DNA of 64,000 nt from Macrostomum hystrix (lineage: Eukaryota > Animalia > Platyhelminthes), in contig CATNEN010000038.1 in the NCBI GenBank assembly GCA_950097015.1, forward strand, positions 27,776,001 to 27,840,000, given 5' to 3'. Below, in pieces: positions 1 to 17,357 of the stretch (positions within the stretch are counted from its first letter, which is position 1; each line of letters starts with the position of its first letter). The notes below the pieces were generated by a model that saw nothing but the letters and a program-made list of their open reading frames with translations, searched no databases and was not told where the DNA came from. The translations under genes and the position numbers were made by a program.

Positions 1-2083
1 GAGAGCGAATGCTGAGAACCAAGCAGGAAAGAAAGTGGAGTCCATAAAGCTGAAGCGCAAGTTCGAATCTTTGGTTAGTCACTGAGCACTGACCAATTAC
101 ATATACGAGCGTATACGAGATATATACCTATTTTGTGATATCTCGCATACCTTTAATTTTCAACTAGGTTACCCAGTTGGCAAAAATCGGAGGCAGTGCC
201 TCTTGTGTAATTCGTCTGCCAGACCGCAAACTAGTCATTCTTGAAACCCCTGATGTTAGTGGAGCCGCAGAGCGGACGAATTTCGCTTCAGTAAGTAACT
301 TCTAGCGCTTTAGTCCACATGCGAATACCAAGTTGAACGCGAGTTAAATCGTTATTCAACGTTTTGTCTCTTTCTAGTATGCGTTCTTTCGCAGCAGCGG
401 TTCTACCGATGACATGACAATCGAAGAGTTGCGCTCTTCATGCGCTTCCATGCTACAGCTTAAGTATAGTAAGTGCGACTATTCTGCATAATCGTATATC
501 ATTGTATATCATTCCGTTAAACGTATTTCAGAATGTAGAATGTAATGTAGTCCTCGATTGTGTATGTCCATCTATCCAAATTATGTTACTACTTTCAGAT
601 TATTATAATTAACTTGTATGAGCACAATCCTGTAATGCTTTTAGAGCAGTCAGGCGGCGGCCGTCGTCTGAACTACGTAAAATATCCAGCCCAGGGATTT
701 TGGTCCTCATGGCCTCTAGGCGTTCCACCGAATATTCCAGTCAATTCGATGTCAAAGGAGCAGCTTCTCAAAGTCTGGCGCGTCAGAGACGAGCTACAGT
801 TCAATCCCAGGAGCAGCTCCTCTGTTTCAACCGGATCGTTTAATCGAAATCTGGATCATGAGTCTGGGTTTGTTATACCATATTTTTTACATATTTTTTT
901 TAAGTTCGTTGTGCTTGGATTAGCAGCCTGCAAAAAGGCAATTCTGCCAATTTCGCTGACCCCTGAACAGACACGCGCATACTCACTAGAAAGTGTGTGT
1001 GTGTGTGTGTGTCTGTGTGTGTACTCTTGTACTCTGTATGTAAACTCTGCCCTGACTTCATCCTCAGGCAGCTCGTCGACGCTTGTACACTCACAGTGTG
1101 CCTCCGACCGTCCAATGCGTCAACTGCACTTCCCACTTCCCTATTTTTAAGCTAAGTACTCATGAACTCACTAAACTCCTTTTAGGTCATCCGTGGCTGG
1201 CGTTTTTTCGGGTTTTGTCGAATACGATAGCACCAATCAAGCCACCTTTGAGCGCTCATCTTCCGAGACCGCTTCCGATTCTGGTGCTGCTGCCTCGGTG
1301 CGCACGACATCTGGTGCTGCTGCCTTGGTGCGCACGACATCTGGTGCTGCTGCGTCGGTGCGCTCGACATCTGGTGCTGCTGCGTCGGTGCGCTCGACAT
1401 CTGGTGCTGCTGCCTCGGTGCGCTCGACATCTGGTGCTGCTGCCTCGGTGCGCACGACATCTGGTACTGCTGCGTCGGTGCGCTCGACATCTGGTGCTGC
1501 TGCGTCGGTGCGCTCGACATCTGGTGCTGCTGCGTCGGTGCGCTCGACATCTGGTGCTGCTGCCTCGGTGCGCACGACATCTGGTGCTGCTGCCTCGGTG
1601 CGCTCGACATCTGGTACTGCTGCGTCGGTGCGCTCGACATCTGGTGCTGCTGCCTCGGTGCGCTCGACATCTGGTGCTGCTGCCTCGGTGCGCTCGACAT
1701 CTGGTGCTGCTGCCTCGGTGCGCTCGACATCTGGTGCTGCTGCCTCGGTGCGCACGACATCTGGTACTGCTGCGTCGGTGCGCTCGACATCTGGTGCTGC
1801 TGCCTCGGTGCGCTCGACATCTGGTGCTGCTGCCTCGGTGCGCTCGACATCTGGTGCTGCTGCCTCGGTGCGCACGACATCTGGTACTGCTGCGTCGGTG
1901 CGCTCGACATCTGGTGCTGCTGCGTCGGTGCGCTCGACATCTGGAACCATTATCACTAACTCCGATCCTTCACCTCCTTTCTCGTTAGTCCAGAGTACAG
2001 TTGCCGGGTCGTCTGGCATTCGCGTTTTCTTTCGTTCCTCTGACTCAGTAGCGACAAAAGTTTTTCGAATAGACACCTCTTAG
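1..2083 (+). CDS. 5'-partial multi-exon gene encoding a TFII-I/GTF2I-like protein (N-terminal ES-x4-LAK domain, one I-repeat-like domain, 22 x 10-aa Ser/Ala/Thr tail)
   Basis: Exons <1-73, 168-290, 378-468, 645-867, 1186-2083. All introns are GT-AG, phases 0,0,1,2 join into one open frame ending TAG 2081-2083. Translation ...KLKRKFESLVTQLAKIGGSASCVIRLPDRKLVILET...NFASYAFF...TIEELRSSCASMLQLKYKQSGGGRRLNYVKYPAQGFWSSWPLGVPPNIPVNSMSKEQLLKVWRVRDELQFNPR... The family call is a by-eye match to recalled TFII-I sequence, not a search. Confidence 0.72.
920..1090 (+). mobile_element. Diverged 3'-UTR fragment of the LINE at 25030-25890, in an intron
   Basis: GCAGCCTGCAAAAAGGCAATTCTGCCAATTTCGCTGACCCCTGAACA matches 9973-10020 and the reverse complement of 25075-25125. 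Contains a (GT)n tract and the CTGCCCTGAC...TCAGGC hairpin. Confidence 0.55.
1281..1945 (+). repeat. 30-bp coding tandem repeat, 22 copies (CTGGTGCTGCTGCSTCGGTGCGCWCGACAT; SGAAASVRST)
   Basis: Directly visible 30-bp period inside the last exon of the TFII-I-like gene. Confidence 0.97.
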
Positions 2084-2236
2084 CAACCGTCTTCTTTTCT
2101 GGCTCATATCAGTTAAAGATTGTGAACATAAAATCGGTCGTAGTTTACGCTAAGGTCTTTCTAGCCACTGTTTTAGTTCTTATTCGTAGTTGTACAACTT
2201 CCCACGATAGAAACACCGAGCATCTAAAATTCTGGA

Positions 2237-2613
2237 TTGCATTTAGATAATGTTGCATTTAGATAGTGTTGCATTTAGGTAGTGTTGCATTTAGATAGTG
2301 TTGCATTTAGATAGTGTTGCATTTAGATAGTGTTGCATTTAGGTAGTGTTGCATTTAGGTAGTGTTGCATTTAGATAGTGTTGCATTTAGGTAGTGTTGC
2401 ATTTAGATAATGTTGCATTTAGATAGTGTTGCATTTAGATAGTGTTGCATTTAGATAGTGTTGCATTTAGGTAGTGTTGCATTTAGGTAGTGTTGCATTT
2501 AGATAGTGTTGCATTTAGGTAGTGTTGCATTTAGGTAGTGTTGCATTTAGATAGTGTTGCATTTAGGTAGTGTTGCATTTAGATAGTGTTGCATTTAGAT
2601 AGTGTTGCATTTA
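2237..2613. repeat. 17-bp minisatellite (TAGRTAGTGTTGCATTT)
   Basis: Directly visible, about 22 copies. Confidence 0.95.
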
Positions 2614-3199
2614 GCGGTGCGTATTTTTAATGCAGGATGACGAGAACAAGTGGGGAGCTGGACTAAAACGAGGTAGAAACCAGAATAAAGTTAGCCCGCT
2701 CTACAGCATTTATCACATGCTTATGTAAGCACTGCTCCCCTCACCTTTCGAAGTGCTTGAGTGGCAAAAGGCCATGATGGTAATTTTATACTGAGTTGAT
2801 CAGGCGCAATCAAGGCAAAAGGACTTTATCAATGACCACTTGACAACATACAGCTTGCTAATTAAATAAGATTTGAGAGGAATTTAAGTATACGTGATTG
2901 GCAGCCAAAAGTTTGACTTCACTCATGTGAGTTGTTACTCGTAAAGGCTGAAAGTGTACTCTCAGTTTTCCTGGATTTTCTTGGCTTTTTTACTTTGCTT
3001 AATCAAGTCGCTAGATTTAGCTAGGTACTTTTTTCTTTGCTAAGCACTTACTATGTCTTCTTACGGAAAGTGTGGCGAGGTTCTACATGTATGACAATTG
3101 TTGTAATGGGAAATTAAAAAATGCAGCCATAAACCATTTTCATGGTGTATGGAATATCCTGCGGAGTAATATTCATAAAATAATTAACTGCACGTGCCC

Positions 3200-3330
3200 C
3201 AATTGGGGCAGATTTACAGAAGACAGCACAGCCGCAGCTATTTTGCGCTGTGCCTCCGCAGGCTGGGTATGACTATTCAGTCCATGGACTGGGGCGGGGC
3301 CACGCGCAGCCTCAATTACGCTGGCACCCG
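3200..3330 (-). mobile_element. Diverged LINE 3'-UTR fragment
   Basis: GCAGGCTGGG...GTCCATGGACTGG...CGCAGCCT is collinear with GCAGGTTGGG...GTCCATGGACTGG...CGCAGCCT at 25124-25177. Confidence 0.45.
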
Positions 3331-3607
3331 TTTAAAGCTTGGCCTTAATAACATGGTATATAATAACAAACGCTACGTAGCCCACTGCATGGTAACAAAA
3401 AATGGGCATCAATTAAGGCTCGCGTCGAATGGGGCGCCACAGCAGACAGCTTGCGAGCGGACAAACTCCGGCCGTTGTCAGTGTCGTTTGAGACCATAAA
3501 AAACGTAAAATTTTGCTTAGTCTAAAAAACTAAAATTAAACTTACACTCCATATTCAACTCAAAACGCGTGACTTGTATATCGAGCACTGGATTGACTCC
3601 GATGTAA

Positions 3608-3886
3608 GTAGGATGACTGCGAGTGTATTCAATACAGCTGGGATGCAAGTACATGTAGGATGACTGCGAGTGTATTCAATACAGCTGGGATGCAAGTACA
3701 TGTAGGATGACTGCGAGTGTATTCAATACAGCTGGGATGCAAGTACATGTAGGATGACTGCGAGTGTATTCAATACAGCTGGGATGCAAGTACATGTAGG
3801 ATGACTGCGAGTGTATTCAATACAGCTGGGATGCAAGTACATGTAGGATGACTGCGAGTGTATTCAATACAGCTGGGATGCAAGTA
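3608..3886. repeat. 47-bp tandem repeat, 6 identical copies, interrupted by the Tc1-like element
   Basis: Units start at 3608, 3655, 3702, 3749, 3796, 3843. The unit resumes (TACATGTAGGATGACT) at 5486. Confidence 0.95.
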
Positions 3887-5485
3887 TTGCTTTTGTCGCG
3901 CTATGTGGAACAGTGGACATGCAAAACGGAACGGCCCATGGTGGAATTCTATGGCCAAGCGTTTGAATTCACACGAGAAAGAAGCCATAGACAACTCAAT
4001 TTGTCATGCTATGTGGAACGATGAGCCAGAATAGAAGGAACGATTTTAGTTTTTCAGAGACAAGAACACGCTTTCATTTTCTTTCGTTTGATCAGTTAAG
4101 CAATAATGGCGCCCCAAATTGCTGTACGTGATCGACGTACAGCGCATCGTCGCCGCCTTGCACCGTGGACTGTCGATGAAGGATGTGTCAGTCTTGTTAG
4201 GAGTATCCAAAACTTCTGTTCAGCGTATTCGGTCAACATTCGAACAAGCTGCATGGCAGGTTGGAAGCTTTGCCTCGTGGAGGATGCAAGGAAGCAAACT
4301 GCAAAATGGACGCAAAGATGCGAGATTTTTTACAACATGAGGTGCAGCGAAATCCCTTTCAAACGCTAAAGTCAATGGCTGAGAAGCTGATCGGACGCTT
4401 TCCTGACAAGCCACAGGTGAGCCTTAAAACAATTGATCGAACAATGGATGGTTTGCTCTTTACGGTCAAACTTGCTACCAAGGGGACGGATATATTCACC
4501 TAAACACCAACCGAGTCGAAAGCCTGGACGCCAGAAGCGAATACGCTAACTTCATGCTCCACTTAGCTCCAGGAGTTCACACTGTCTACTTAGATGAGAC
4601 CGGTTTTAACTTGTGGACCCGGAGGTCGTAGGGCAGGTCGGCTCGTGGACACCAAGTGTTCGCAAGGATTCGGCACGGTGACAACCCAGAGGGGTCCTAA
4701 CGTTACGGTTTGCATGGCAATTTCGTCGGAGTTCCGGTTGGTGCATTATGTCATCCAGAGAGGGGCCAAACGCAGCAAAGGTTTCAAGAATTTTTAGACC
4801 ACCTAGCAGACCGCTGCCATCAACTGGACCCTACCGGAAACTGGGTAATTTTTATGGATGGCCCAAATTTTCATCGTGGTGTGGAGATCCGAGAGAACCA
4901 TCGGGACAGAATTGTGACACGAATCCTACCCCCGTATTCACCATTTCTAAACCCGACCGAATTTGCTGCGTTGAAGTCAAATCTCAAGAACCGTTTGGCG
5001 GAAGCCGGCATGGTTGAGAATGAGCAAGTTTGAACAGAAGGAGTGACACTTAAGCAGTGGAGATTCATGCTACTTGAACGAGAGGCGACTGAAGCTGTTG
5101 GTCAAGCAATCACTGCGGACAAGTGCGCTGGCTGGGAGCTGCGCTGCAATCGATTGTTTGGATTGGGTTTGAGGCGACATCTGTTTTAGGGGTTGAAATT
5201 TTTTAACTTTGATGTTTCAATTGCAGACTTAAAATATGATTTATTGGAATGCAACTCTGAAAAATGTTCTGTTTCTGCTTAATTTCATTCTTTCTGCAAA
5301 TAAAATCTAAAATCGTTCCTTCTATTCTGGCTCATCGTTCCACATAGCATGACAAATTGTCTTGCATCAATTGCATGAGTTGTCTATGGCTTACTTTCTT
5401 TTGTGAGTTCAAACGCTCGGCCATAGAATTCCATGGGCCGTTCCGTTTTGCATGCCCACTGTTCCACATAGTGCGAAAAATACAA
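3887..5485 (+). mobile_element. IS630-Tc1-mariner DNA transposon (Gambol-like), full length but decayed
   Basis: Imperfect TIRs of ~165-180 bp (3887-4049 and 5307-5485), each with an internal direct repeat CTATGTGGAAC. TA duplication at 3885-3886 and 5486-5487. Transposase remnants inside. Confidence 0.93.
4106..5189 (+). pseudogene. Tc1/IS630-type DDE transposase with frameshifts and stops
   Basis: HTH (GLSMKDVSVLLGVSKTSVQRIR), LPRGG linker, YLDETGFNLW, QRGPNVTVCMAIS, FMDGPNFH, LPPYSPFLNPTE and ITADKCAGW are spread over several frames with internal stops. Confidence 0.9.
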
Positions 5486-5723
5486 TACATGTAGGATGAC
5501 TCTGAGTAAGTGAGTTAAGTGAAGTGGTAAAAAGCTTCGTACATATGTATATGGCAAATTCTTAACAAAATGTTTTTTGGGTGGCGTAAGGGTGAACGAT
5601 ATGCTGACGATGGCGGGCCAATCGTTGAAATTGCGTGAGCCGAAGTGAATAATTTCGACAAAGTAAGTTAAAAATCACTTTGACATGTCTACGCTCTTAT
5701 AATGTGCCCTGGGCATTCACGCT

Positions 5724-6146
5724 TGTCACGATGCCCAAGCACACTAATACGAGCATTTTAATTTAATTGCGTACACGCACGATGACTCAGTTTAAGTCAT
5801 CGTGAGGCAGATAACAGGTAACTGTCTGCCTGTCTCGCTTGACCTTGGAGCATGTGCACCTATGTCTGTTAGTTTGATGCGAATCTGCGGGGCTTCAGCC
5901 TCTCCCCCGCGCTGTCAGTATTTAAGAGGGCTTTCAGCCTGTGTGCCAGCGCGCTTTTTGACACCTTCTGCTGCGTGTTGCTTTTCGAGTCTGCATTTCT
6001 AAAACTGGTGCCGCTGGTTATTTTAGCGCCAAATAAATGTTCGCTTTAACTGTCCGGCCTCGTCCTATCGGTTGTTCGTGCCATGCATTTCTGCTGCTTG
6101 GACTACATCCTCTGGGAGTTAGCATTTTTTTGGGTTATTGCGATAC
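5724..6146 (+). mobile_element. Possible solo LTR
   Basis: Starts TGTCACGATGCCCAA, ends TTGGGTTATTGCGATA (degenerate inverted ends). TATTTAAG at ~5919 and AATAAA at ~6032. No TSD found. Confidence 0.3.
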
Positions 6147-7279
6147 CAAAATATTAATTTGTAAGTACTTTTACCTGATTGAAATGTGGTTCCAATCATC
6201 AAGGACAATTTATAATTGGACGAATCAACCAACGATTCATAATTTAAGCTTACGCTCGTAGTCCTTCTGGTATAATTGGCACGTTCTAGAACCGAAAAAA
6301 AGAAAGAAATCGGATGAATAAAACTTTATACAGACCTAAAATTTTATTCGCCGTTAATTAATTTCCGTTAAACACACAATCAGATATACAATTTATTTGG
6401 CTTTTAACCGTTTCCTTAAAAAAATCGCAGCAAGGAAAGCAATCCAATATACATTCATGATTGAAGTAACAAAAATGGAGATATTTTTGACTTACCATGA
6501 GCCTTAGATTTAATAAATAATGAACATAGCTTTGATTCTCATCAAAACGTGTCGTCTTTCCACAAGCTCTCTAAGACATCAGCGATCACGGTAGGTTCTA
6601 GATCAACTGAACTCAATTTGTAACAAAAACTGGGTAACTATCCTTTCTATATATTATGGATCAGAGAAACCATTCAAACAATCATAGGCATGCAATGTAA
6701 GGGGCGTAAGGAACAATTACGAGAATTTAGTTGGGCACAGGACGGAACCGGTATAAATGTAACAATTACTTGCTACGTTAAGCTACGCTTGTTTCTATGG
6801 TATTTATATAATGCCTCGAATTTAGTCTATTATACAATTAAAAAATAGCTAGAAGTACAACGTTCAGAAACAACACAAATATAAGTAGGGAGATACGAGA
6901 AGTTATACGAGAAGATACAAGAACCTGAAGTACAATAAGCTTGACTGATTTGCAAATACATAAGTGAACTGCATGTACATTACTAAACAAGAACAGCATT
7001 AAAAAGAATTTCTGAGCATAAGATTATAGCTTATCCTGTGCAAGTAACGTGACTTTAATCAACTGCGCTTGTAAGTGCCACAGATAACCTAAAGCCACAG
7101 CCACACTGCTGCTCTGAACATTTTTGCTGCCTATCGCTAGCTCGTACGTACGCGTTTTCTTAGCACATACATGTGTAAGTTAAACTGGTCTGGGAATCCA
7201 GAGCACATATGTCATTCACAAGTAAGTCAGAGAAAAAGAAGTGCAGACCCGACAACGCAGTGCATTAAGAGAACTGAAT

Positions 7280-10200
7280 TCATTCAGTGTCTGTGTCATC
7301 ATCCGATGCTGAAAGAACAGGAAGGAATGAAATAATAGTACGAAAAGCTATTTATAGCACAATGTAAAGCAGTACGAGCGACAAATCACGCGCGCATATT
7401 CGACAATTTGTTGCCTGTGTGGGCAACAAAAACATAATAAAGTGAGCCCGAAATAATCTAGTCTAAAGTGATGAGATACAAACACTTTCAATCTTTACAA
7501 CCTTCTGAAACTATCATACCATAACATGGACATGGTCGCCGAATCGTTTTTAAAAATTGGCAATTTTTACTTACCGGAGTCACTCATAGAGTAAACGTCA
7601 CACGTTTCTTCGTCAAGAGCCACAGAGCCGACTGCCTCCATCGCCAGTATGTTGGTGTCTTGAACCAGGGTTTTTTCTGATGGAAAGGCGGTGACATGCC
7701 GATGAAGAAGTCGACTGAGACCGATGAGCCGATTGTAAAGCACAGGAGAGTTATAATGACTTGAGGCAATGCGCGCCCAGGTTTGCTGAATGGCCCGAAG
7801 TAGAAAGCGGGTGGAGCGTCGAACTTCACACTCCACAATGGCTATCTCCTCTTTAGCTCGAAGGCGCATATGATATAGACGATAGGCAACCATCTGCGAC
7901 GTTGTATTTGCGTCCAATTGGCTAAGATTAGCTGTTTTAAAGCCTTCAGCTGCAAAGCTCGTAAAATCTTCTAGACTAAGTGGAGGCTCAGAAGATAGGC
8001 TAGAGTTGAAGCGACGAACTATGATCTCGCGTTTTTTATCGATTGCTTTCTTAGCCGACGCCAAGCGTTTTGCCATTTTCTGACCCCGATCGGTAGCGAC
8101 ATGCTGGGCCAGATATTCCCGCTCTGCGGTTAGTGCAGCTAGATCGTTGATAGCTAACTCACGAGTAGTGCTCACCCGTCTTTGATTAGATGTTGCCATG
8201 ATGGATGCACAAAAGTCTGGCGCCCAAGATTCCACGTACGCCTCAAAAGCAGAAAGCGTCGCTGAAAAAAGTAACGAAAAATTATTGCGGAAAAGCAAGA
8301 GTAAAAAGAGGCTACATTTAATCGAGTGCAAAGCATGCTGTACTAAATTAAAATGTTTTGCTTTTGTGCAAAGTTTATCTGACGAGTTCATACGTGAGAT
8401 TTGATGGCTCGAAGCAAATGCAGTTATCTCATTTTCGATGCGTGCATTGGTCCGCTGGACGTATTTGATGCGCTGCGTCAGCCAGTTAGCTACACGAATT
8501 TAGGCATCGGATGGGATGGTTGTTAAGTTATTAATTGGGATAAAACTTTCACGTGTACAGAATTAGCTGACTTTGATAACTTATTAGCATGAGCGCAAGA
8601 GAAAGAGGTCAAGAAGCACAAGATGCAAAACTTCCCGCAAAAGCATTTCCGGTTCATTTATAAACTACAAGTAGCTGGTATTGCCTTACTGATGTTGACG
8701 ATTAATTCGAAGTTCATGTCAGCAGCTAAAGTGTTTAAAAATCGACGTCTATTGACGTGAGTCATCTCCTTCGTTTGTGCGGAAAAACGCCGTAAATAGC
8801 TCCACAGTCGTTCGCAACCTTCGCCGTCTGTAAGACCGACATCCGGTTTGAAGCGTACGCCGTTTGTTAGCTGGCACGGCCATGAATGTCCGTAGGCATG
8901 CATTGCAGGCACTACGAAAGCAATTTGAGAATCCCGAAATGTAGCTTTCAGCTTGCATGCAATGTCATATGAGACAATAATGCGAGCCGCTGGGTTGCGT
9001 GCCACAGCTGTCTTCACTGATGCCACAGCGTAGTTGAGTCTAAGATGGAGTAGTTCGGATTGGCTAGCAAGTAAGTCCAGTGCATAGTACATTAAGTTTA
9101 AAGTTTCTGCGACCAACCCCAAACTTAATGTGGCTTTGCCTTGTAGCGGCTCATGACTAGCCGTTAGGATGCATTACCACTCTGCCAATGATCAGAAAAA
9201 ATGAAAAATGAAAATTCCTAACTAAAACTAAACTCTTAATCACATTACCGTTCTCCACTTGTAATCATATCCGAAAGCGTTAATATTGACTCGTGGCGGC
9301 AAGATGCAGCAAACAGGCCAAAGACATCCAAATTTGTTTTGTCTCTTGCCGTGACGAGCTGCTGACCTCTTTCACCTGCTTTCCAATTAGGACAACTCTG
9401 AGCATTGACTTGAAAGTCACCGGACATGTCTGCTTCCACAAAGTAGCTATTGGTGTCGTGCTCAGGAAAAGATGAAAGGCCGGCAGAGGCTCTGTGCCGC
9501 ATTCCGAAGCAGCCGTCGAGCTGAACAATCAATGGAGCCGACAAGGTATCTTGGCATTCGGACTAAACAGAGATTAGGAATGGTTAAAAAAATTATTTTG
9601 ACTAAAAAAGCAATACAATACACGATGGAGCACTGTTTGGAGAAAGTGGGGCAAAACTTGACGAAATTTCGAGGCTCCTATAAATTACATTTCGCACATG
9701 TGAATATTTACAATACCCATGATTAGATATAAGAGAAGGAAAAATGCTAATTCTTCGACTTAAACCGTATAGCAAGCTGGACAATTGGTCTCTCCATCCC
9801 ACTGAATTGAACTCAAAAGCTGGCGAAAAGCAGTCATTGAGCCGAAAGTATTCAGCGGCCGGTATAGATTCATCTGAAATAAAAAAGCTTGATAACATAT
9901 ACTACCTGTAATAATAATAATGTTAGCAGGAGGGCTGTGGGCAATGGCACATCATTTGGTGACACTAGACCTGCAGCCAGCGAGGAGGCAATTCTGCCCA
10001 TTCCGCTGACTCCTGAGCACACACGCACACAGATACCGTACGCAGGCACACACTCACACAGAGGTGTACATCTGCCCTGACTTTTTCATCGTCAGGCGGT
10101 GTACATTTTCTCTGTGCGTTGGAGGTTGGCCCTCATGGGCGTAAATTGCACGACAAGCCCCCAAGCCTTCTCTCCGCGGCTGCACCTCAAATTAATGTGG

Positions 10201-12021
10201 CCTTGCTCGCGGAATCGAGCTCAGGGACCGTGGTGCGAGAGGCAAACGCGTTAACCGCTCTGCCACTCACCCCCTCATATACTACCTATAAAAACATCAA
10301 GCATCAAAACATTTTGCATTGAATTCTGTCACCAAATAAATTTGGCTCCAAGAGTATACAGGTACCAAAACTTCCTGACTTAACGTGCATGTAGACAAAA
10401 AAATTACTTCATCGTACCCCTTGTCGGCCCCACATAGGCGATCTGAAAGATGCCATGGCACAACAAGCACTTTGTAGGGAGCCTGCACACTTTTTGTTGA
10501 TAGCGATAAGCTGTAAAAGGAGCTTGAAAGAGGCAGCAGTAACGCGAATCGCCAGATCTGGTTCAGCTTGCAGCGGCCAGAATCCATGGCGAACCAGTGA
10601 TGCGCGGATGTTGCTGCAATTACATACTTCTAAAGAAGCATCGAATTCGTCGCCTGAAATTGTGTTATGAAATTTGATTGGATTTCAGCGTAATGTATAT
10701 GTATATGATGTATGAGGTGGAGCGAGTGTATGTTGTGTATATGTTGTATCTCAATATCAGCACGATCTAGGATTAGAAACTAAGGGTGAGCTGCCGACAG
10801 CACAGCCACAGCCATTGCGTAGCGCATTTGAAGATTCACAAAATTAATCCCAGACAATGCTAGCACTCATTTAACAGCTGGGTGAACTGAAGCAATGCAG
10901 AGTTAAGTGTTGTGCTAATAGACAAAAAGTTTACAGTAAAATCAGGAATCGAACCTCGACCTTCAAGCCCTGAGTCGGACATTATAAACTACAAACCCAC
11001 ATGTCGGTAAGAAAGCAAGAAGGTTTTCCGCTTTAAAAGGTTTTAAAAAAGTAATTTGGCCCTGTACAAATAGTGATAAAAATCGTATAGGCATTTACTT
11101 ACCATTGTCATCAAAAATAAACACTTGCTTGACAAACGATGATCCCAAGCACGAGCATCGACGTTTCAGCACAGCGGGAGCTGTCAGTGGAACGTAAACA
11201 AGACCCTGTTGGAAGTAGTAAATTAAAAAATACAAACAATTCTGAATTCTGAGAATAAAAATGCAAATGATACAGTGAAAACACTGTAAAAAATACAATA
11301 GTATAGTGTATTGATAAACTAATCTTAAATGTCATAAAAATCATTCAAAGTGCACCGAAAGCCAAAACTGTAAAGGCTCGTTCACACTGCCATGAAATGA
11401 AGTGACTCGTTTTGGTGTACACCTACTTTGTGGTAAAATGAATGGGAATTAAGAAAGTAAATTACTGTGTTCTAGCCTACGTTTGATGGCAGTATGAGCC
11501 AACTTTAAAGCTTACATTCCACTGTTCCGCCACGTGCGGAGGATGATGTTTGTGTTGTTCGTCAAGGCAATTACGGCAGACTTGCAGTAAGTGGCATGCA
11601 CTGCACCGAAACGGCGCCTCATGTGTTTTACACTTTACGCAGTTGCCTAATGGGCTAAAAAAATCGCAGATTGCTGACTCTGCATCGCGCTGGCTATCTG
11701 ACCATGCCTTGGTAGCACGATTGATACGATCCTGATATTGTGTGTTGCCACACAGGGGTGGTGAAGCAGAACTGAATGAAAGGTGTTCTTCGGCACTGGG
11801 GGCAGATTCTTGATCATGTGGTCGTTGCGGCGGTCTGTGAAGGTTTTTTATACGCTAAAAACTTACAATTCTGTACATTTACGCGCAACGTACACTTTCC
11901 GTAATCACAGAACTTACAAAGAGCTAGTACCATCAACCGTTATCTTTCGCCTGCTAGCTCGCTGACCAGGTGTGTAGTGTCTTACTTTAAAGTGCAACTC
12001 AGTAACTTTTGCACGCAGCAT
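7280..12021 (-). CDS. KDZ (Kyakuja-Dileera-Zisupton) transposase with N-terminal CxC cysteine clusters; 10 exons, 781 aa, apparently intact
   Basis: Exons 12021-11918, 11834-11516, 11205-11103, 10653-10418, 9873-9766, 9562-9249, 9039-8690, 8489-8394, 8261-7575, 7308-7280 (2346 nt, all GT-AG, phases consistent). Motifs: CVKC..FRCSAC..CRNC..H..PPH..W; VCNC..LVRHGFWP; CPAC; LDGCFG; GLFAASCRH..GER; YDIACK; PAMHAYGH..CQ; GLTDGEGCERLWS. Confidence 0.92.
9960..10106 (+). mobile_element. LINE 3'-end fragment with terminal stem-loop, in a KDZ intron
   Basis: Reverse complement of 25031-25128. Ends in hairpin TGTACATCTGCCCTGAC-tttttcatc-GTCAGGCGGTGTACA. Confidence 0.65.
10120..10274 (-). mobile_element. 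tRNA-derived SINE (family A), in a KDZ intron
   Basis: Minus strand GGGGTGAGTGGCAGAGCGGTTAACGCG (A box) ... GAGCTCGATTCC (B-box-like). Related copies at 19150-19283 and 20280-20385. Confidence 0.7.
10850..11000 (-). mobile_element. tRNA-derived CORE-like SINE (family B), decayed
   Basis: Minus strand GGTTCGATTCC B box followed by ACACTTAACTCTGCATTGCTTCAGTTCACCCAGCTGTTAAATGAGT, which resembles the CORE-type SINE central domain. Confidence 0.6.
11371..11508. mobile_element. Degenerate PIF/Harbinger-like MITE in a KDZ intron
   Basis: Imperfect inverted ends TAAAGGCTCGTTCACACTGCCAT / ATGGCAGTATGAGCCAACTTTA. Confidence 0.45.
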
Positions 12022-12102
12022 ATTGCTAAAAAAATAATGCCTTATGAGTAAACACTAAACAGCGAAAAATGTCGATTTATAAAAGGAAGAGCAAGCTTAG
12101 CA

Positions 12103-14945
12103 AGAGGAGGATAGAGGAGGATAGAGCAGGGTGGAGGAGGCTAAAAGAGGCTAGAGGAGGTTGAGGATGGTGGAGGGTAGAGGATAGTGGGGAGGGTAGA
12201 GGAGGGTAGCGGAGGGTAGAGGATGGTTGAAGAGGGTGGAGGGTAGAGGATAGTGGGGAGGGTAGAGGATGGTGGGGAGGATCGACGAGGTTAGAGCAGG
12301 GTAGAGGAGGGTAGAGGAGGGTAGAGCAGGGTAGAGCAGGGTAGGGGAGGGTAGGGGAGGTTAGAGCAGGGTAGAGGATGGTAGGGGAGGTTAGAGCAGG
12401 GTAGAGGATGGTAGGGGAGGTTAGAGCAGGGTAGAGGAGGGTAGAGGATGGTTGATGGTAGTGGAGGGAAGAGGATGGAAGGGGGTAGAGGAGATTAGTG
12501 GATGGCTAGGGAGGGTGGTGGAGGGTAGAGGATGGCGGGGAAGATAGAGGAGGGTAGCGGAGGGTAGAGGATAGTGGGGAGGATCGACGAGGTTAGAGCA
12601 GGGTAGAGAATGGTTGAGGAGGGAAGGGGGTAGAGGAGAGTAAAGACTGGTGAAGGAGGGTAGAGGATGTTGGGGAGGATAGAGAAGGGGAGTGGAGGGT
12701 AGAGGATGGCGGGTAGGAAAGAGAAGGGGAGTGGAGGGTAGAGGATGGCGGGTAGGAAAGAGAAGGGGAGTGGAGGGTAGAGGATGGCGGGGAAGATAGA
12801 GGAGGGTAGAGGAGGGTAGAGAAGGGAAGGGGGTAGAGGAGAGTAGAGGAGGGTAGAGCAGGATAGAGCAGGGTAGAGGAGGGTAGAGGAGGGTAGAGGA
12901 GGGTCGATGGTCGATGGTAGTGGAGAGAAGAGGAGGGAAGGGGGTAGAGGAGAGTAGAGGAGGGTAGAGGAGGGTAGAGAAGGGTAGAGGAGGGTAGAGG
13001 AGGAAAGAGCAGGGAAAGATATAGTAGAGTAGAGTTGAGTAGAGGAGAGTAGAGGAGGGTAGAGGAGGAAAGAGCAGGGAAAGATAGAGTAGAGTAGAGT
13101 TGAGTAGAGGAGAGTAGAGGAGGGTAGAGCAGGGTAGAGGAGGGTAGAGGAGGGTAGAGGATGGTAGTGGAGGGAAGAGGAGGGAAGGGGGTAGAGGAGA
13201 GTAGAGGAGGGTAGAGCAGGGTAGAGCAGGGTAGAGGAGGGTAGAGGAGGTTGAGGTTAGAGGAGGGTAGAGGAGGTTGAGGTTAGAGGAGGGTAGAGGA
13301 GGGTAGAGAAGGGTAGAGGATGGTAGTGGAGAGTACAGGAGGGTAGAGCAGGGTAGAGGAGGGTAGAGGAGGGTAGAGGATGGTCGATGGTCGATGGTAG
13401 TGGAGGGAAGGGGATAGAGGAGAGTAGAGGAGGGTAGAGCAGGGTAGAGGAGGTTAGAGGAGGTTAGAGGAGGTTAGAGGAGGGTAGAGGAGGGTAGAGC
13501 AGGGTAGAGGAGGTTAGAGGAGGTTAGAGCAGGGTAGAGGAGGGTAGAGCAGGGTAGAGGAGGTTAGAGGAGGTTAGAGGAGGGTAGAGAAGGGTAGAGG
13601 AGGGTAGAGGAGGTTAGAGGAGGGTAGAGCAGGGTAGAGCAGGGTAGAGGAGGGTAGAGGAGGTTAGAGGAGGTTAGAGGAGGGTAGAGGAGGGTAGAGC
13701 AGGGTAGAGCAGGGTAGAGGAGGGTAGAGGAGGTTAGAGGAGGTTAGAGGAGGGTAGAGGAGGGTAGAGCAGGGTAGAGGAGGGTAGAGGAGGTTGAGGT
13801 TAGAGGAGGGTAGAGGAGGTTGAGGTTAGAGGAGGGTAGAGGAGGGTAGAGAAGGGTAGAGGATGGTAGTGGAGAGTAGAGGAGGGTAGAGCAGGGTAGA
13901 GGAGGGTACAGAGGAGGGTAGAGGATGGTCGATGGTCGATGGTAGTGGAGGGAAGGGGATAGAGGAGAGTAGAGGAGGGTAGAGCAGGGTAGAGGAGGTT
14001 AGAGGAGGTTAGAGGAGGTTAGAGGAGGGTAGAGCAGGGTAGAGGAGGTTAGAGGAGGTTAGAGGAGGGTAGAGGAGGGTAGAGCAGGGTAGAGGAGGTT
14101 AGAGGAGGTTAGAGGAGGGTAGAGAAGGGTAGAGGAGGGTAGAGGAGGTTAGAGGAGGGTAGAGCAGGGTAGAGCAGGGTAGAGGAGGGTAGAGGAGGTT
14201 AGAGGAGGTTAGAGGAGGGTAGAGGAGGGTAGAGCAGGGTAGAGCAGGGTAGAGGAGGGTAGAGGAGGTTAGAGGAGGTTAGAGGAGGGTAGAGGAGGGT
14301 AGAGCAGGGTAGAGGAGGTTAGAGGAGGTTAGAGGAGGTTAGAGGAGGGTAGAGCAGGGTAGAGGAGGTTAGAGGAGGTTAGAGGAGGGTAGAGGAGGGT
14401 AGAGCAGGGTAGAGGAGGTTAGAGGAGGTTAGAGGAGGGTAGAGAAGGGTAGAGGAGGGTAGAGGAGGTTAGAGGAGGGTAGAGCAGGGTAGAGCAGGGT
14501 AGAGGAGGGTAGAGGAGGTTAGAGGAGGTTAGAGGAGGGTAGAGGAGGGTAGAGCAGGGTAGAGCAGGGTAGAGGAGGGTAGAGGAGGTTAGAGGAGGTT
14601 AGAGGAGGGTAGAGGAGGGTAGAGCAGGGTAGAGCAGGGTAAAGGAGGGTAGAGGAGGTTAGAGGAGGTTATAGGAGGGTAGAAGAGGGTAGAGAAGGGT
14701 AGAGGATGGTAGTGGAGAGAAGAGGTTAGAGCAGAGTAGAGGAGGGTAGAGGATAGTAGTAAAGGGAAGAGGAGTAGAGGGAAGAGGGAAGGGTGTAGAG
14801 GAGAGTAGAGGATGGTGAAGGAGGGTAAAGGATGGTGGGGAGGATAGTGAAGGGTAGTGGAGGGTAGAGGATGGCAGGGAAGATAGAGGAGAGTAGTGGA
14901 GGGTAGAGGATGGTTGAGGAGGGCGGAGGCTAGAGGAGAGTAGGA
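12103..14945 (+). repeat. 2.8-kb polypurine array, 10-bp core AGAGGAGGGT / AGAGCAGGGT / AGAGGAGGTT
   Basis: Directly visible. Homogeneous centre, degenerate flanks. Starts ~80 bp upstream of the KDZ ATG. Confidence 0.95.
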
Positions 14946-15824
14946 AAGCCTTTAGGATAGTAACTAGCTAGCTGGCAATAATGTTTCTTTTTATTTTGCT
15001 AGTAGACATAATAGATTTACAAGACATAATAGATCAGGAGCTAGATCAATATAATTATATACATTTTGTCAGTCAATAAAAAGAACATTTATATAGGTAG
15101 GGACCTAGCTATTTTTAGGTATTTAGGTATATCAAAACATTTTTCATATCAATAGCTACCAAGAGAATTTCATTTAGACTAGTCAGTTTATTTAAATACT
15201 GGTGTACTTGCATTGAATCTAGTTATATTTGTCAGGCCATTGATTATCAATTGTGAAAGTGGTTTTGAAGTAGGCTATAATGCTGTATAGCAGTTATATA
15301 TATATATATATATAGGCCTATATATATATACACTAAACATATTTTAGCTAGGCTACACAGTACACAGAAGCACATAAGCAAGCTATACCTAAAGCTATAG
15401 TCGATATATGATATATAATTTTTTGCTATTGTCTAATATCCTTTTGAATAGTCATATTCAACTAGCTCAGCCTAGCTACTATTAGTGCTAGTACTAAAAA
15501 TAGAATTAGCAACAGCCAATTCCAATTATACGATAGCCTAATTGTATAATTACTGGCTTAAGCTTTCACTAGCCTAAACATTATGTTAGATTAGTTGTCC
15601 TGTTGCGAAACTTATTTAACATAAGCAGCATGCTTTATATTTATATTTCAGCACGTATTTATATATAGCAGCACGTTCGACGTTTGCCCCACATAAAAGC
15701 GTTGTATTGGCTTTGAAAGCTATAAGCTGCGCGTATCAATACGCCGCTGCGCGCAGAGTACCGCTTTGTAGGCTCGTGTTGTAACGCAGATTTGGCTTTA
15801 CGGAGTGTAACACGGGTGCACTTG

Positions 15825-15970
15825 TAATAGAAGTAACGGACTCACAAAAAGTCCATTCCGTTACCAAGTCCGTTACCTAACAAAAAAAGTAACTTCCGGT
15901 AGTAACGCTTCTAAAAACGTAACTTCCGGTAGTAACGGAGGAACGGAGGAACGGAAGTTGCCCAACACTG
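15825..15970. mobile_element. DNA-transposon-like right terminus with subterminal repeats
   Basis: Clustered GTAACGGA / TCCGTTAC / GTAACTTCCGGTAGTAACG motifs in both orientations, ending GTTGCCCAACACTG (reverse complement CAGTGTTGGGCAAC). No partner end found in the window. Confidence 0.55.
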
Positions 15971-17357
15971 CATATAGTACAGAACAATAAGAAAGAAACC
16001 ACGACCACGTGGCCATGCATGGTTCTGAATTTGAAAACAATATGATTTCTATGAAATCGTCCTGAAATTAAGCTCGTAAATAAAACGGATGATCTCGGAC
16101 TGTGGTTCGACAACGCTAAACCTTTGTTGTCCTTTTTATCGTCAACAATGATATAAAATAACGATGTGCCAAAGATGAGCACAAGTCTAGTTATCTTCTT
16201 ATAATATAAGTTTTAATTACTAATCATTTGTCGTGGTTCGTTACGATCATTTACCTACACAGCAGATTTTTTTCAACATTACTTTCGCAGTGCATTAGCG
16301 TGTCGAAAGGCGCTGTTTTTACATTATTATATAATAGCTCACATGCTCTGACTTACAACTGCAGCATGATGTGCACTGCGAGTGAATTGCGAATCTATTG
16401 CGAGAGCTGCAATTAACGAGCCCGATTAATTCGTAATTAGTAATTCGCTGTGTACGACCGTTTTTCCCTCGATCTGATGTGCACATTGGCTCATAATTTG
16501 CTTAGTAAACATTTGTTGTTGCATGCCGAGCTTTATTATTTGCATGTAAATTAAAAAACGAGGTGACATCGTCACAGATCATACTAGTTTCGACACGGGT
16601 CCCGCCGATTCAAGTATTTTCATAAGTAATTTAGTAATTAAAAGAAAATTTATAATTAATGAACTGTACGTTGCGCAACGATTATGTAATATTTCCCACC
16701 CTATTTCTCCCCAAGCTTGCTGTACAACGTGGGGCCAATCAGAGCGCGGCCGGGCTTGTTTATACACTGTACTGCAGGGTCAAGGCTGGCCGTCAGCGGA
16801 GACTTTTTCCATCACGGTTCACGCAAATGATGTTTGAATTGTCCCCCTATACATATGTATAATCTCTTCTTCTTTCGTTCCACGTTCGGCGCATTCCGAC
16901 ATATTCGGACGCGGTTGCCCGCAGTCCCCCTGCTACTTTCCCCCATAAACAATCTTACTTTCTTGTGATATATTTGAACATGCTAACTTATTTTTATCAT
17001 GCATGTTCTTTTATAATACGAGAACTTCGTAAGCAGTTTATTCCAATTGCCAATCAGCAAAGTTAGTCGTTGTTTTGCCATATATAACTTCCGATAATAG
17101 TAATAATCATTAAATATTCCGGAACGTTCGATGTGCATTTTGTTGTCTACAGTTTCGAGCGATCGTAAAGATTTTTCTTTATAAATATTTGATGAATGTT
17201 TCTTTATCTGAAACATGATACGTACTGTGTAGTGTGTATATACACTACAGCTTTTTTATTAACGCATGCTAGCTAGTAACTATACGAGTAATGTATATGT
17301 GTCTACTCGAATGCTTTGAGTCGCTACTCTCTCTACGCCATTCAGCCACTGTAAACA

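What the first reader, a model, noticed from the sequence alone, without database searches (positions are those of the whole stretch)
1..15970. Candidate two-gene KDZ transposon: transposase plus TFII-I-like accessory gene
Seen: the TFII-I-like gene (+) and an intact KDZ transposase (-) are tail-to-tail, separated by minisatellites, a nested Tc1, a possible solo LTR and non-coding sequence. A transposon-like end lies beyond the transposase at 15970 with no partner in the window. The introns of both genes lack the minisatellites that fill host-gene introns here. Established: KDZ elements carry accessory chromatin or DNA-binding functions (TET/JBP in fungi; SWIM, SAP, HMG, Ulp1 domains in Zisupton), and other DNA transposons such as Harbinger and CACTA pair a transposase with a separate DNA-binding protein. 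Inference: a >16-kb element in which the I-repeat protein is the DNA-binding partner. That would point to a transposon origin for the vertebrate TFII-I family.
Basis: partly seen in the sequence, partly recalled or inferred. Interest (0 to 1): 0.92.

Follow-up and report, generated by a model that had tools for sequence, protein, structure and literature searches.

The report
Two-gene KDZ transposon, I-repeat-like partner
A 21.8-kb jumping gene in a flatworm genome carries, besides its KDZ transposase, a second expressed gene that stays with this transposase lineage through many diverged families, and part of its protein weakly resembles the DNA-binding repeat of the vertebrate factor TFII-I.

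Summary
The element runs from 6,019 bases before the window to window 15818 (21,838 bp). It has perfect inverted ends (CACCCGTG...), 7-bp target duplications, three copies 98-100% alike with different flanks, and five paralogous empty sites. Both genes therefore moved as one unit. The "end" at 15970 belongs to an older repeat into which the element inserted.

The second gene is spliced and expressed. Its conserved exon occurs at 22 loci. Fifteen lie 4.6-8.6 kb from a KDZ domain, always tail-to-tail, and only in one KDZ clade.

The TFII-I likeness is real but weak. Pfam GTF2I finds nothing. A profile search of PDB sequences, Foldseek and VIA on two AlphaFold models, and the ESM Atlas structure search all rank GTF2I domains first for this module, none significantly. 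The N-terminal domain looks MADS/SRF-like. The tail is a coding minisatellite.

A DNA-binding cofactor role, perhaps on the roughly 290-355 copies of TAGAGGAGGG in each arm, is inferred only. A transposon origin of TFII-I is untested.

The scan has already noted such second genes in other KDZ elements of this genome (s1-410600, s1-332707).

The parts
1..15818 (.). Window part of the 21,838-bp KDZ element. The whole element is G000:C38:27769981-27791818, i.e. window -6019 to 15818; the left 6,019 bases are L017:3981-10000.
   Evidence: The C3 copy aligns at 99.4-99.95% identity and the C31 copy at about 98%. Both alignments stop exactly at these ends.
1..73 (+). Second (accessory) gene, 3' end of exon 1. 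The exon starts upstream of the window. An in-frame ATG lies at -283, and homology to the relative's transcript starts at -287.
   Evidence: Spliced contigs, joint 73/168; open frame.
168..290 (+). Accessory gene exon 2. It encodes part of the N-terminal MADS/SRF-like domain (motif ..VILET....G).
   Evidence: Joints 73/168 and 290/378. The exon is conserved in paralogues and in P0004.
378..468 (+). Accessory gene exon 3. It encodes the first helix of the I-repeat-like module (EELRSSCASMLQLKY) and ends in phase 1.
   Evidence: Joints 290/378 and 468/645. Equivalent exons ending K[YF]S|K occur in the paralogues.
645..867 (+). Accessory gene exon 4. It encodes the conserved core (G.L.Y.KYP.QG.W..WP.GVP...P...LS..EL..IW.....I.F), which is I-repeat-like.
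   Evidence: Joints. Twenty-two loci in the genome match at E 1e-7 to 1e-28. GTF2I domains are the top structural hits.
1186..2083 (+). Accessory gene exon 5. The open frame runs through the 30-bp minisatellite (1280-1944; 22 copies of a 10-residue unit, SGAAASVR[ST]T) to a stop at 2081-2083.
   Evidence: Joint 867/1186 and contig cover to 1260; ORF; TRF. Paralogues also carry peptide tandem repeats after the core. Transcript cover beyond 1260 was not tested.
3881..5507 (+). Nested degenerate Tc1-like element. The 47-bp minisatellite at 3608-3886 derives from its end.
   Evidence: DDE_3 at E 8e-11; inverted arms 3881-4054 and 5302-5491. It lies within the stretch that aligns continuously with the C3 and C31 copies.
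7570..11854 (-). KDZ transposase gene with several exons. Open segments: 11854-11480 (Cys-rich), 10684-10412, 9901-9605, 9562-9248 and 9173-8661 (KDZ core), and 8499-7570 (C-terminal 310 aa).
   Evidence: Pfam PF18758 above its cut-off; open frames. The C3 copy has a 1-bp indel in the core exon. The splice pattern was not verified.
12102..15818 (-). Right inverted arm. It holds about 288 copies of the 10-bp unit AGAGGAGGGT (12103-14923) and an 880-bp unique terminal part ending ...CACGGGTG at 15818. It mirrors the left arm, L017:3981-7774, which holds about 355 copies of CCCTCCTCTA at L017:4878-8362.
   Evidence: Self inverted match at 87% over 3.8 kb; the terminal 880 bp are 100% identical between the arms; TRF; termini.
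15819..15825 (.). Right copy of the 7-bp target site duplication CACTTGT. The left copy is L017:3974-3980.
   Evidence: At five paralogous empty sites the two flanks overlap by exactly these 7 bp.
15819..15970 (.). End of the older host repeat into which the KDZ element inserted.
   Evidence: Five other genomic copies at 99% identity run uninterrupted across the insertion point. The motif has no partner within 20 kb upstream.

Best explanation
This is a recently active, probably autonomous DNA transposon of the KDZ superfamily. Its 7-bp target duplication and CA..TG termini are Kyakuja-like.

It is 21,838 bp long and bounded by 3.8-kb inverted arms. It carries two convergent genes:
- A multi-exon KDZ transposase.
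- A five-exon accessory gene. Its protein has an N-terminal alpha-beta-beta-alpha domain (MADS/SRF-like in models), a module of about 75 residues with the predicted fold of the TFII-I I-repeat, and a tail of 10-residue tandem repeats encoded by a minisatellite.

Shown:
- The borders, target duplications and empty sites, so both genes move together.
- Splicing and expression of the accessory gene.
- The pairing is conserved, in the same orientation, through many diverged families of one KDZ clade.

Inferred:
- The accessory protein is a DNA-binding cofactor of transposition, analogous to TnpA of En/Spm or the Myb-like protein of PIF/Harbinger.
- It probably recognises the subterminal sequence, with the hundreds of TAGAGGAGGG units in each arm as candidate sites, and helps the transposase to pair or find the ends.
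For: Borders and mobility:
- Identical termini CACCCGTGTTACACTCCG... sit at both ends of three copies (C38, C3, C31).
- High-identity alignment between copies stops at those termini, and the flanks are unrelated.
- TSDs are CACTTGT (C38) and ACTATTA (C31).
- At five loci the left and right flanks of the C38 copy are contiguous and overlap by exactly 7 bp.

Transposase: KDZ Pfam domain above its cut-off.

Accessory gene:
- Four GT..AG joints appear in a 100%-identical contig (depth 54). The same four joints appear in 90-95%-identical contigs of two wastewater metatranscriptomes.
- Of 22 exon-4-like loci, 15 lie 4.6-8.6 kb from a KDZ hit and always convergent. Family groupings of the two genes agree. 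Other KDZ clades lack the accessory gene.
- Exon structure and the tandem-repeat tail are conserved among paralogues only 25-41% identical.

Fold:
- GTF2I domains rank top for the exon 3-4 module in five searches:
  - Profile HMM against PDB: 2dzq E 0.45, 2ed2 E 1.1.
  - Foldseek: 2dzr prob 0.85, rmsd 2.2 A over 43 columns.
  - ESM Atlas: top three clusters are GTF2I, TM 0.67-0.69.
  - Sources.

Literature: 7-bp TSDs and CA..TG termini are reported for Kyakuja (PMC12730594).
Against: - No experiment or computation here shows DNA binding, binding to the arms, or any effect on transposition.
- Pfam GTF2I, SRF-TF and Plus-3 do not match the protein or its full-length Macrostomum lignano homologue.
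- The fold searches are not independent, because all rest on one sequence family.
- The C3 copy has no target duplication, and its transposase core exon carries a 1-bp indel.
- The C31 copy has a stop in the putative N-terminal extension, so the start codon is uncertain.
- The transposase gene model and its expression were not verified.
- A Penelope-like fragment sits directly upstream of the accessory gene and lies within the span the transcript contig would cover if it is colinear there. The native promoter is therefore unclear.
Confidence: 0.8

Rival explanations
1. The accessory protein is carried and needed by the element but is not an end-binding cofactor. It might be a regulator (repressor or activator of the transposase promoter), a tether to host chromatin that guides target choice, or a counter-silencing factor, as proposed for TET/JBP genes of fungal KDZ elements.
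For: - Long-term linkage shows selection for the element but does not say for what.
- The best fold neighbours (SRF/MCM1, NRF1, TFII-I repeats) are transcription factors.
- Fungal KDZ elements carry chromatin-modifying passengers (PMC12730594).
Against: No data favour this over end-binding. Huge subterminal arrays of one 10-bp motif are what end-binding cofactors such as TnpA use in En/Spm (established knowledge).
Confidence: 0.25
2. The resemblance of the exon 3-4 module to the I-repeat is a chance likeness of a small alpha/beta unit, not common descent. The accessory protein would then belong to a family of its own.
For: - Pfam PF02946 finds nothing in six frames of the whole genome, nor in the full-length homologue P0004 at E <= 10.
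- phmmer of exon 4 against 1.84 billion proteins finds no GTF2I protein.
- All structural scores are below significance.
- Another follow-up in this scan could not show the identity (s1-332707).
Against: - Five searches with two predictors (AlphaFold2, ESMFold), two query proteins only 37% identical, and one pure sequence profile all put GTF2I domains first, out of 177,635 to 7.7 million targets.
- The aligned parts are equivalent in every case and cover 47-80 residues of a domain of about 75 residues.
Confidence: 0.28
3. The accessory gene is a captured host gene (a passenger, as in Pack-MULEs) with no function for the element.
For: Large DNA transposons often pick up host fragments. This element also carries a Tc1 and a Penelope-like fragment.
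Against: - The gene is found with the same orientation and exon structure in at least six or seven KDZ families whose accessory cores are only 25-41% identical.
- Its frame is open in 18 of 22 loci.
- No intact copy was seen that is clearly outside a KDZ context: four of the seven loci without a KDZ neighbour carry stops.
Confidence: 0.05
4. The three copies are segmental duplications or assembly duplicates, not transposition products.
For: Copies are 98-100% identical, and the C3 copy has no target duplication.
Against: - Homology stops exactly at perfect inverted termini.
- Two copies have 7-bp duplications.
- Five empty sites restore the uninterrupted target.
Confidence: 0.01

Closest known systems
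Kyakuja lineage of the KDZ (Kyakuja-Dileera-Zisupton) DNA transposons
   Same: The KDZ transposase domain (PF18758) is present, with a Cys-rich N-terminal region. Target duplications are 7 bp and termini are 5'-CA..TG-3', as reported for fungal Kyakuja (PMC12730594). The element is large and carries an extra gene.
   Different: - Described Kyakuja families have no TIRs, whereas this element has 3.8-kb inverted arms with hundreds of 10-bp units.
- The extra gene of fungal KDZ elements is a TET/JBP dioxygenase. Here it is a small putative DNA-binding protein.
- The host is a flatworm.
- The lineage assignment rests on TSD length and termini only. No transposase phylogeny was made.
Two-component DNA transposons: En/Spm (CACTA) with TnpA plus TnpD, and PIF/Harbinger with a Myb-like protein plus transposase
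   Same: There is one transposase plus one separate small protein with a DNA-binding-type fold. The termini are CAC..GTG, and subterminal arrays of short repeats sit in inverted orientation (established knowledge for En/Spm; PMC12730594 for Harbinger/Nuwa).
   Different: The transposase superfamily is unrelated. The accessory protein shows no detected similarity to TnpA or Myb/SANT. The two genes are convergent rather than products of one transcript. The role is not tested.
GTF2I / TFII-I I-repeat (Pfam PF02946; PDB 1Q60, 2DZR, 2DN4, 2EJE and others)
   Same: The predicted fold and the order of elements match: helix, strand, loop with G.P, helix, strand. The length is about 70-75 residues. The motif pattern is LR....L..KY ... 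V.Y ... G[VL]P..[IV]P ... L..[IV][WL].....[IL].F. GTF2I domains are the best neighbours in five searches.
   Different: The Pfam model does not match. There is one module (possibly two), not five or six tandem repeats. The protein also has a different N-terminal domain and a minisatellite-coded tail. It is transposon-borne.
MADS-box (SRF/MCM1/MEF2) and NRF1 DNA-binding domains

Membership tests
KDZ transposon superfamily | Transposase with the KDZ catalytic domain (PF18758) | tested here: met
   98 and 44 bits on two adjacent exons, against a cut-off of 26.6.
KDZ transposon superfamily | Defined ends with target site duplication (7 bp in Kyakuja, 8 bp in Zisupton) and CA..TG termini | tested here: met
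   CAC...GTG termini and 7-bp TSDs in two of three copies. Five empty sites confirm the duplication. Reference values come from PMC12730594.
KDZ transposon superfamily | N-terminal zinc-chelating CxC-type domain | tested here: inconclusive
   A Cys/His-rich stretch lies in exon 11854-11480, and a C.C motif lies in 10684-10412. Pfam gives only a weak B-box hit (E 0.011) and no CxC model.
KDZ transposon superfamily | Placement within Kyakuja versus Dileera versus Zisupton by transposase phylogeny | not tested
   No reference transposase sequences were at hand, and the spliced protein was not joined.
GTF2I / TFII-I I-repeat family (PF02946) | Match to the Pfam GTF2I profile at or above the gathering score (27 bits) | tested here: not met
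   No hit in six frames of the genome at E <= 1. No hit on exons, paralogues or the full-length homologue P0004 at E <= 10.
GTF2I / TFII-I I-repeat family (PF02946) | I-repeat fold | tested here: inconclusive
   GTF2I domains are the top neighbours, but below significance:
- Foldseek: 2dzr prob 0.85, E 0.47.
- ESM Atlas: TM 0.67-0.69, top three clusters.
- Profile HMM: 2dzq E 0.45.
GTF2I / TFII-I I-repeat family (PF02946) | Several tandem I-repeats in one protein | tested here: not met
   One clear module (exons 3-4). The N-terminal domain is possibly a second one.
GTF2I / TFII-I I-repeat family (PF02946) | Sequence-specific DNA binding by the repeat | not testable with these tools
   Needs EMSA, DAP-seq or similar.
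MADS-box (SRF-TF, PF00319) | Match to the Pfam SRF-TF profile | tested here: not met
Plus3 domain (the name UniRef gives to the homologue A0A1I8GVQ9) | Match to the Plus-3 profile or to the RTF1 Plus3 fold | tested here: not met
   No Pfam hit. No Plus3/RTF1 structure appears among the Foldseek or VIA rows shown.
Two-component cut-and-paste transposons (works-like comparison) | The accessory protein is required for transposition and binds the element's subterminal repeats | not testable with these tools
   Only the co-inheritance of the two genes and the presence of subterminal arrays are shown.

The most novel reading that the evidence does not exclude
The I-repeat of TFII-I/GTF2IRD1 and the accessory proteins of one KDZ transposon clade share a common origin. 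The accessory gene would be an ancient, obligatory partner of these transposases, with possible relatives among the unannotated Basidiomycota proteins that are the nearest ESM Atlas neighbours. The animal GTF2I-domain transcription factors (cnidarian and vertebrate) would descend from a domesticated transposon accessory gene, just as GTF2IRD2 later took up a hAT transposase.
Probability: 0.15. Interest if true: 0.9.

Novelty: new variant of a known kind. Interest (0 to 1): 0.72.

Why it matters
KDZ elements are the least understood large superfamily of cut-and-paste transposons. Their known passengers are TET/JBP enzymes in fungi. No separate DNA-binding partner turned up in the library I could search.

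Here a complete, very young animal KDZ element is defined to the base, with ends, target duplication, empty sites and three copies. Its second gene is shown to be a stable partner of one transposase clade. This gives a concrete system for asking how KDZ transposases find their ends.

It also gives a testable lead on where the I-repeat came from. That DNA-binding module has an unclear origin and is tied to Williams-Beuren syndrome genes.

The enormous mirrored arrays of a 10-bp unit in the arms, and the minisatellite-coded peptide repeats in the partner protein, are unusual features in their own right.

Tried and rejected
- **Pfam GTF2I:** no match in six frames of the genome, on single exons, on paralogues or on the full-length homologue.
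- **phmmer, exon 4 against 1.84 billion representatives:** four hits. Three are repetitive false positives (GntR-, ComGG- and LRR-like by Pfam). One is a real homologue, Macrostomum lignano A0A1I8GVQ9.
- **The search for homologous proteins:** with that homologue and with an alignment, it found only the homologue itself.
- **phmmer of the homologue against PDB:** only chance Hsp70 hits.
- **Metagenome contig scan with exon 4:** nothing.
absent within 20 kb. It was rejected as this element's end.
- **Elements with TIR tips 84-87% like this one (C38:4.26 Mb, C30, C33, C39):** I first took these for sister KDZ elements. The shared 160 bp lie about 425 bp inside their own ends. The two copies I read to their tips (C38, C30) make 9-bp duplications. 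None holds a KDZ or accessory hit, so this is a different family.
- **MAFFT placement of exon 3:** the exon-3 fragments were put in the wrong place in alignment A2. Exon 3 was therefore left out of the alignments used for folding.
- **Joined spliced model:** the spliced accessory protein was never joined or searched as one sequence. Only exons by reference and the natural homologue P0004 were used.
- **Iyer et al. 2014 (PMC3918813):** not held.
Full report
**What is there**

The window is G000:C38:27776001-27840000 of a 220-Mb assembly. Earlier notes of this scan describe it as a Macrostomum-type flatworm.

A KDZ transposase lies on the minus strand. Pfam PF18758 matches window 8661-9173 (98 bits) and 9248-9562 (44 bits), against a cut-off of 26.6. 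Further open exon-like segments run from 11854 down to 7570, including a Cys/His-rich N-terminal one.

At the window's left edge lies a plus-strand gene that continues upstream of the window. I fetched the 20 kb before the window (L011, L017).

**Borders**

I compared the extended locus with two other places that hold the first 1,200 bases at 100% identity (C3:2.81 Mb and C31:0.06 Mb). High-identity alignment starts at window -6019 and stops at window 15818. Nothing outside those points is shared.

Both ends of all three copies begin with the same sequence, CACCCGTGTTACACTCCGTAAAGCC..., in inverted orientation. The element is 21,838 bp long.

Its arms are 3.8 kb long. Each has an 880-bp unique terminal part that is 100% identical between the two arms. 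Each also has a huge 10-bp minisatellite:
- The left arm holds about 355 copies of CCCTCCTCTA.
- The right arm holds about 288 copies of the complementary unit.

**Proof of transposition**

The C38 copy is flanked by CACTTGT on both sides. The C31 copy is flanked by ACTATTA.

The 200 bases left of the C38 copy and the 157 bases right of it each occur at five other loci at 99-100% identity (C39:10.23 Mb, C33:4.51 Mb, C1:23.96 Mb, C24:2.20 Mb, C8:2.94 Mb). At every one of these loci the two matches abut and overlap by exactly 7 bases.

These are paralogous empty sites. The whole 21.8-kb unit, with both genes, inserted into a copy of an older repeat and duplicated 7 bp.

It has no partner within 20 kb upstream.

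Seven-base duplications and CA..TG termini are what a 2025 survey reports for the Kyakuja lineage of KDZ. Zisupton makes 8 bp (PMC12730594).

The C3 copy has no duplication. A solo 185-bp end lies 297 kb away, with a flank that nearly matches (ATGCATG against ATGCATA). This may record a rearrangement. I did not resolve it.

**The second gene is real**

I laid public runs on window -650 to 1260. One run of the organism holds a 2,071-nt contig at 100% identity and depth 54. It skips four GT..AG introns, at 73/168, 290/378, 468/645 and 867/1186.

Two wastewater metatranscriptomes hold contigs 90-95% alike with the same four joints.

The frame is continuous across the joints. It then enters an open frame that runs through the 30-bp minisatellite (1280-1944) to a stop at 2083, encoding 22 copies of a 10-residue unit. 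Cover beyond 1260 was not tested.

An in-frame ATG lies at -283, four bases after the point where the relative's transcript begins to match. The C31 copy has a stop at codon 34 of this extension, and that stretch differs most from the relative. The true start is therefore uncertain.

Upstream lies a 246-codon open fragment with a GIY-YIG-like motif. I read it as Penelope-like; there is no Pfam support. It lies within the span the transcript contig would cover if the contig is colinear upstream of -650. Only the part from -650 onward was actually laid.

**The pairing is old**

A profile of exon 4 finds 22 loci in the genome at E 1e-7 to 1e-28.

Fifteen of them lie 4.6-8.6 kb from a KDZ domain hit, always convergent. 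The KDZ hits involved all have the same exon break at profile position about 100. Fifteen of the 17 KDZ hits of that type have the partner. The other KDZ clades of the genome have none.

Four of the seven unpaired loci carry stops.

The accessory cores of different families are only 25-41% identical. They keep the same exons, including the phase-1 intron after K[YF]S, and all are followed by peptide tandem repeats with a V[KR] core.

Groupings by accessory score and by transposase score agree. A passenger gene would not behave like this.

**What the protein is**

Sequence searches are almost blank.
- Pfam gives no family.
- phmmer against 1.84 billion representatives returns one true homologue, a 225-residue Macrostomum lignano protein (P0004, UniRef A0A1I8GVQ9). 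UniRef names it 'Plus3 domain-containing', and I could not reproduce that name.

All searches used exons by reference or this natural homologue.

For the exon 3-4 module, every structure-aware search ranks GTF2I domains first:

| Search | Query | Result for GTF2I domains |
|---|---|---|
| Profile HMM against PDB sequences | Seven exon-4 sequences | 2dzq (E 0.45) and 2ed2 (E 1.1) among nine rows |
| Foldseek against PDB | AlphaFold2 model of P0004 | Highest probabilities: 2dn4 0.75, 2dzr 0.60, 2dzq 0.57 |
| Foldseek against PDB | Model of the window's own exon 4 | 2dzr first in the PDB (prob 0.85, E 0.47, rmsd 2.2 A over 43 columns); five of 20 rows are GTF2I |
| ESM Atlas structure search | Residues 108-195 | Three GTF2I/GTF2IRD2 clusters on top (TM 0.67-0.69, 77-80 residues aligned), then unannotated Basidiomycota clusters |

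None of these is significant alone, and they share one sequence family. The convergence is hard to ascribe to chance. I put an I-repeat-like fold at about 0.7. Membership of PF02946 is not met.

**How it likely works**

Shown: the two genes move and persist together, and the accessory gene is expressed.

Inferred: the accessory protein is a DNA-binding cofactor, as TnpA is for En/Spm or the Myb-like protein for PIF/Harbinger. The mirrored arrays of TAGAGGAGGG, or the unique 880-bp termini, are its likely sites.

A regulatory or chromatin-tethering role fits the data as well.

**State of the copies**

- C38 (this window): all tested exons are open.
- C3: a 1-bp indel in the KDZ core exon.
- C31: the stop noted above.

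The copies differ by 0-2%, so activity was recent.

**Known or new**

Full-text searches found no paper that links GTF2I-type domains to KDZ elements. Cryptococcus KDZ1-3 are described with a transposase only.

The scan itself has noted the same kind of second gene in two other KDZ elements of this genome. One follow-up accepted the GTF2I likeness and the other did not (s1-410600, s1-332707).

What this report adds:
- Base-exact borders and empty sites.
- The genome-wide pairing count.
- The coding minisatellite tail.
- The MADS-like reading of the N-terminal domain.

A transposon origin of vertebrate TFII-I remains a lead, not a result.

**Limits**

- Reads were laid on the accessory gene, so the transposase has no transcript evidence.

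Noticed in passing
L017:8654-9391 (window -1346 to -609), plus strand: A 246-codon open fragment with a GIY-YIG-like motif (..VVYKFYCSGDRNISYIGKTKRNLYTRVREH..) sits directly upstream of the accessory gene. I read it as a Penelope-like retroelement remnant, but Pfam gives no hit. The region aligns with the C3 copy, and it lies within the span the expressed contig would cover if colinear upstream of -650. It may therefore supply the promoter.
   Followed up: partly
L046/L045 (C38:4.26 Mb), L048/L047 (C30:4.42 Mb), L044/L052 (C39:8.82 Mb), L051/L050 (C33:2.06 Mb): Four elements of 15-29 kb have long inverted ends (tips ACTAAGTACTGATTTCACC...). The two read to their tips make 9-bp target duplications (CAATTATCG, ATTGAGGAT). 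About 425 bp inside each end they hold a 160-bp segment 84-87% like the terminal 160 bp of the KDZ element. No KDZ or accessory hit lies inside them.
   Followed up: partly
L041-L043 (C3:2806324-2828079 and C3:3124675-3124859): The C3 copy lacks a target duplication. A solo 185-bp end lies 297 kb away. Its flank (ATGCATG) nearly matches the flank of the C3 copy's right end (ATGCATA). This may be a transposon-mediated rearrangement.
   Followed up: partly
window 15819-15975 and L017:3781-3980: The repeat into which the KDZ element inserted has at least six copies at 99-100% identity, so it is itself a young family. Its end carries twice the motif GTAACTTCCGGTAGTAACG and the tip CAGTGTTGGGCAAC.
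   Followed up: partly
L031, L032, L034 (paralogous accessory genes); window 1280-1944: In every family the conserved core is followed by a different minisatellite-coded peptide repeat: AVQPVKVGGT, VVQPVRVGSGSNGGG, SSAVTVRGVGAVQG, and here SGAAASVRST. All have a V[KR] core. The repeat tail seems to be a kept feature, not junk.
   Followed up: partly
window 3608-3886 and 5486-5507: The 47-bp minisatellite next to the nested Tc1-like element repeats that element's own terminal 22 bases (TACATGTAGGATGACT...). The array therefore grew out of a transposon end.
   Followed up: partly
contig C1 of G000: Nearly half of the KDZ domain hits, and half of the accessory-gene hits, lie on one 27.6-Mb contig (C1). 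It may be a transposon-rich or otherwise special chromosome.
   Followed up: no
L001:1213-2760 (window -287 to 1260): Two wastewater metatranscriptomes hold spliced contigs 90-95% like the accessory gene, with the same four joints. A related element is therefore expressed in a relative living in wastewater. Upstream of -287 their sequence is unrelated.
   Followed up: partly
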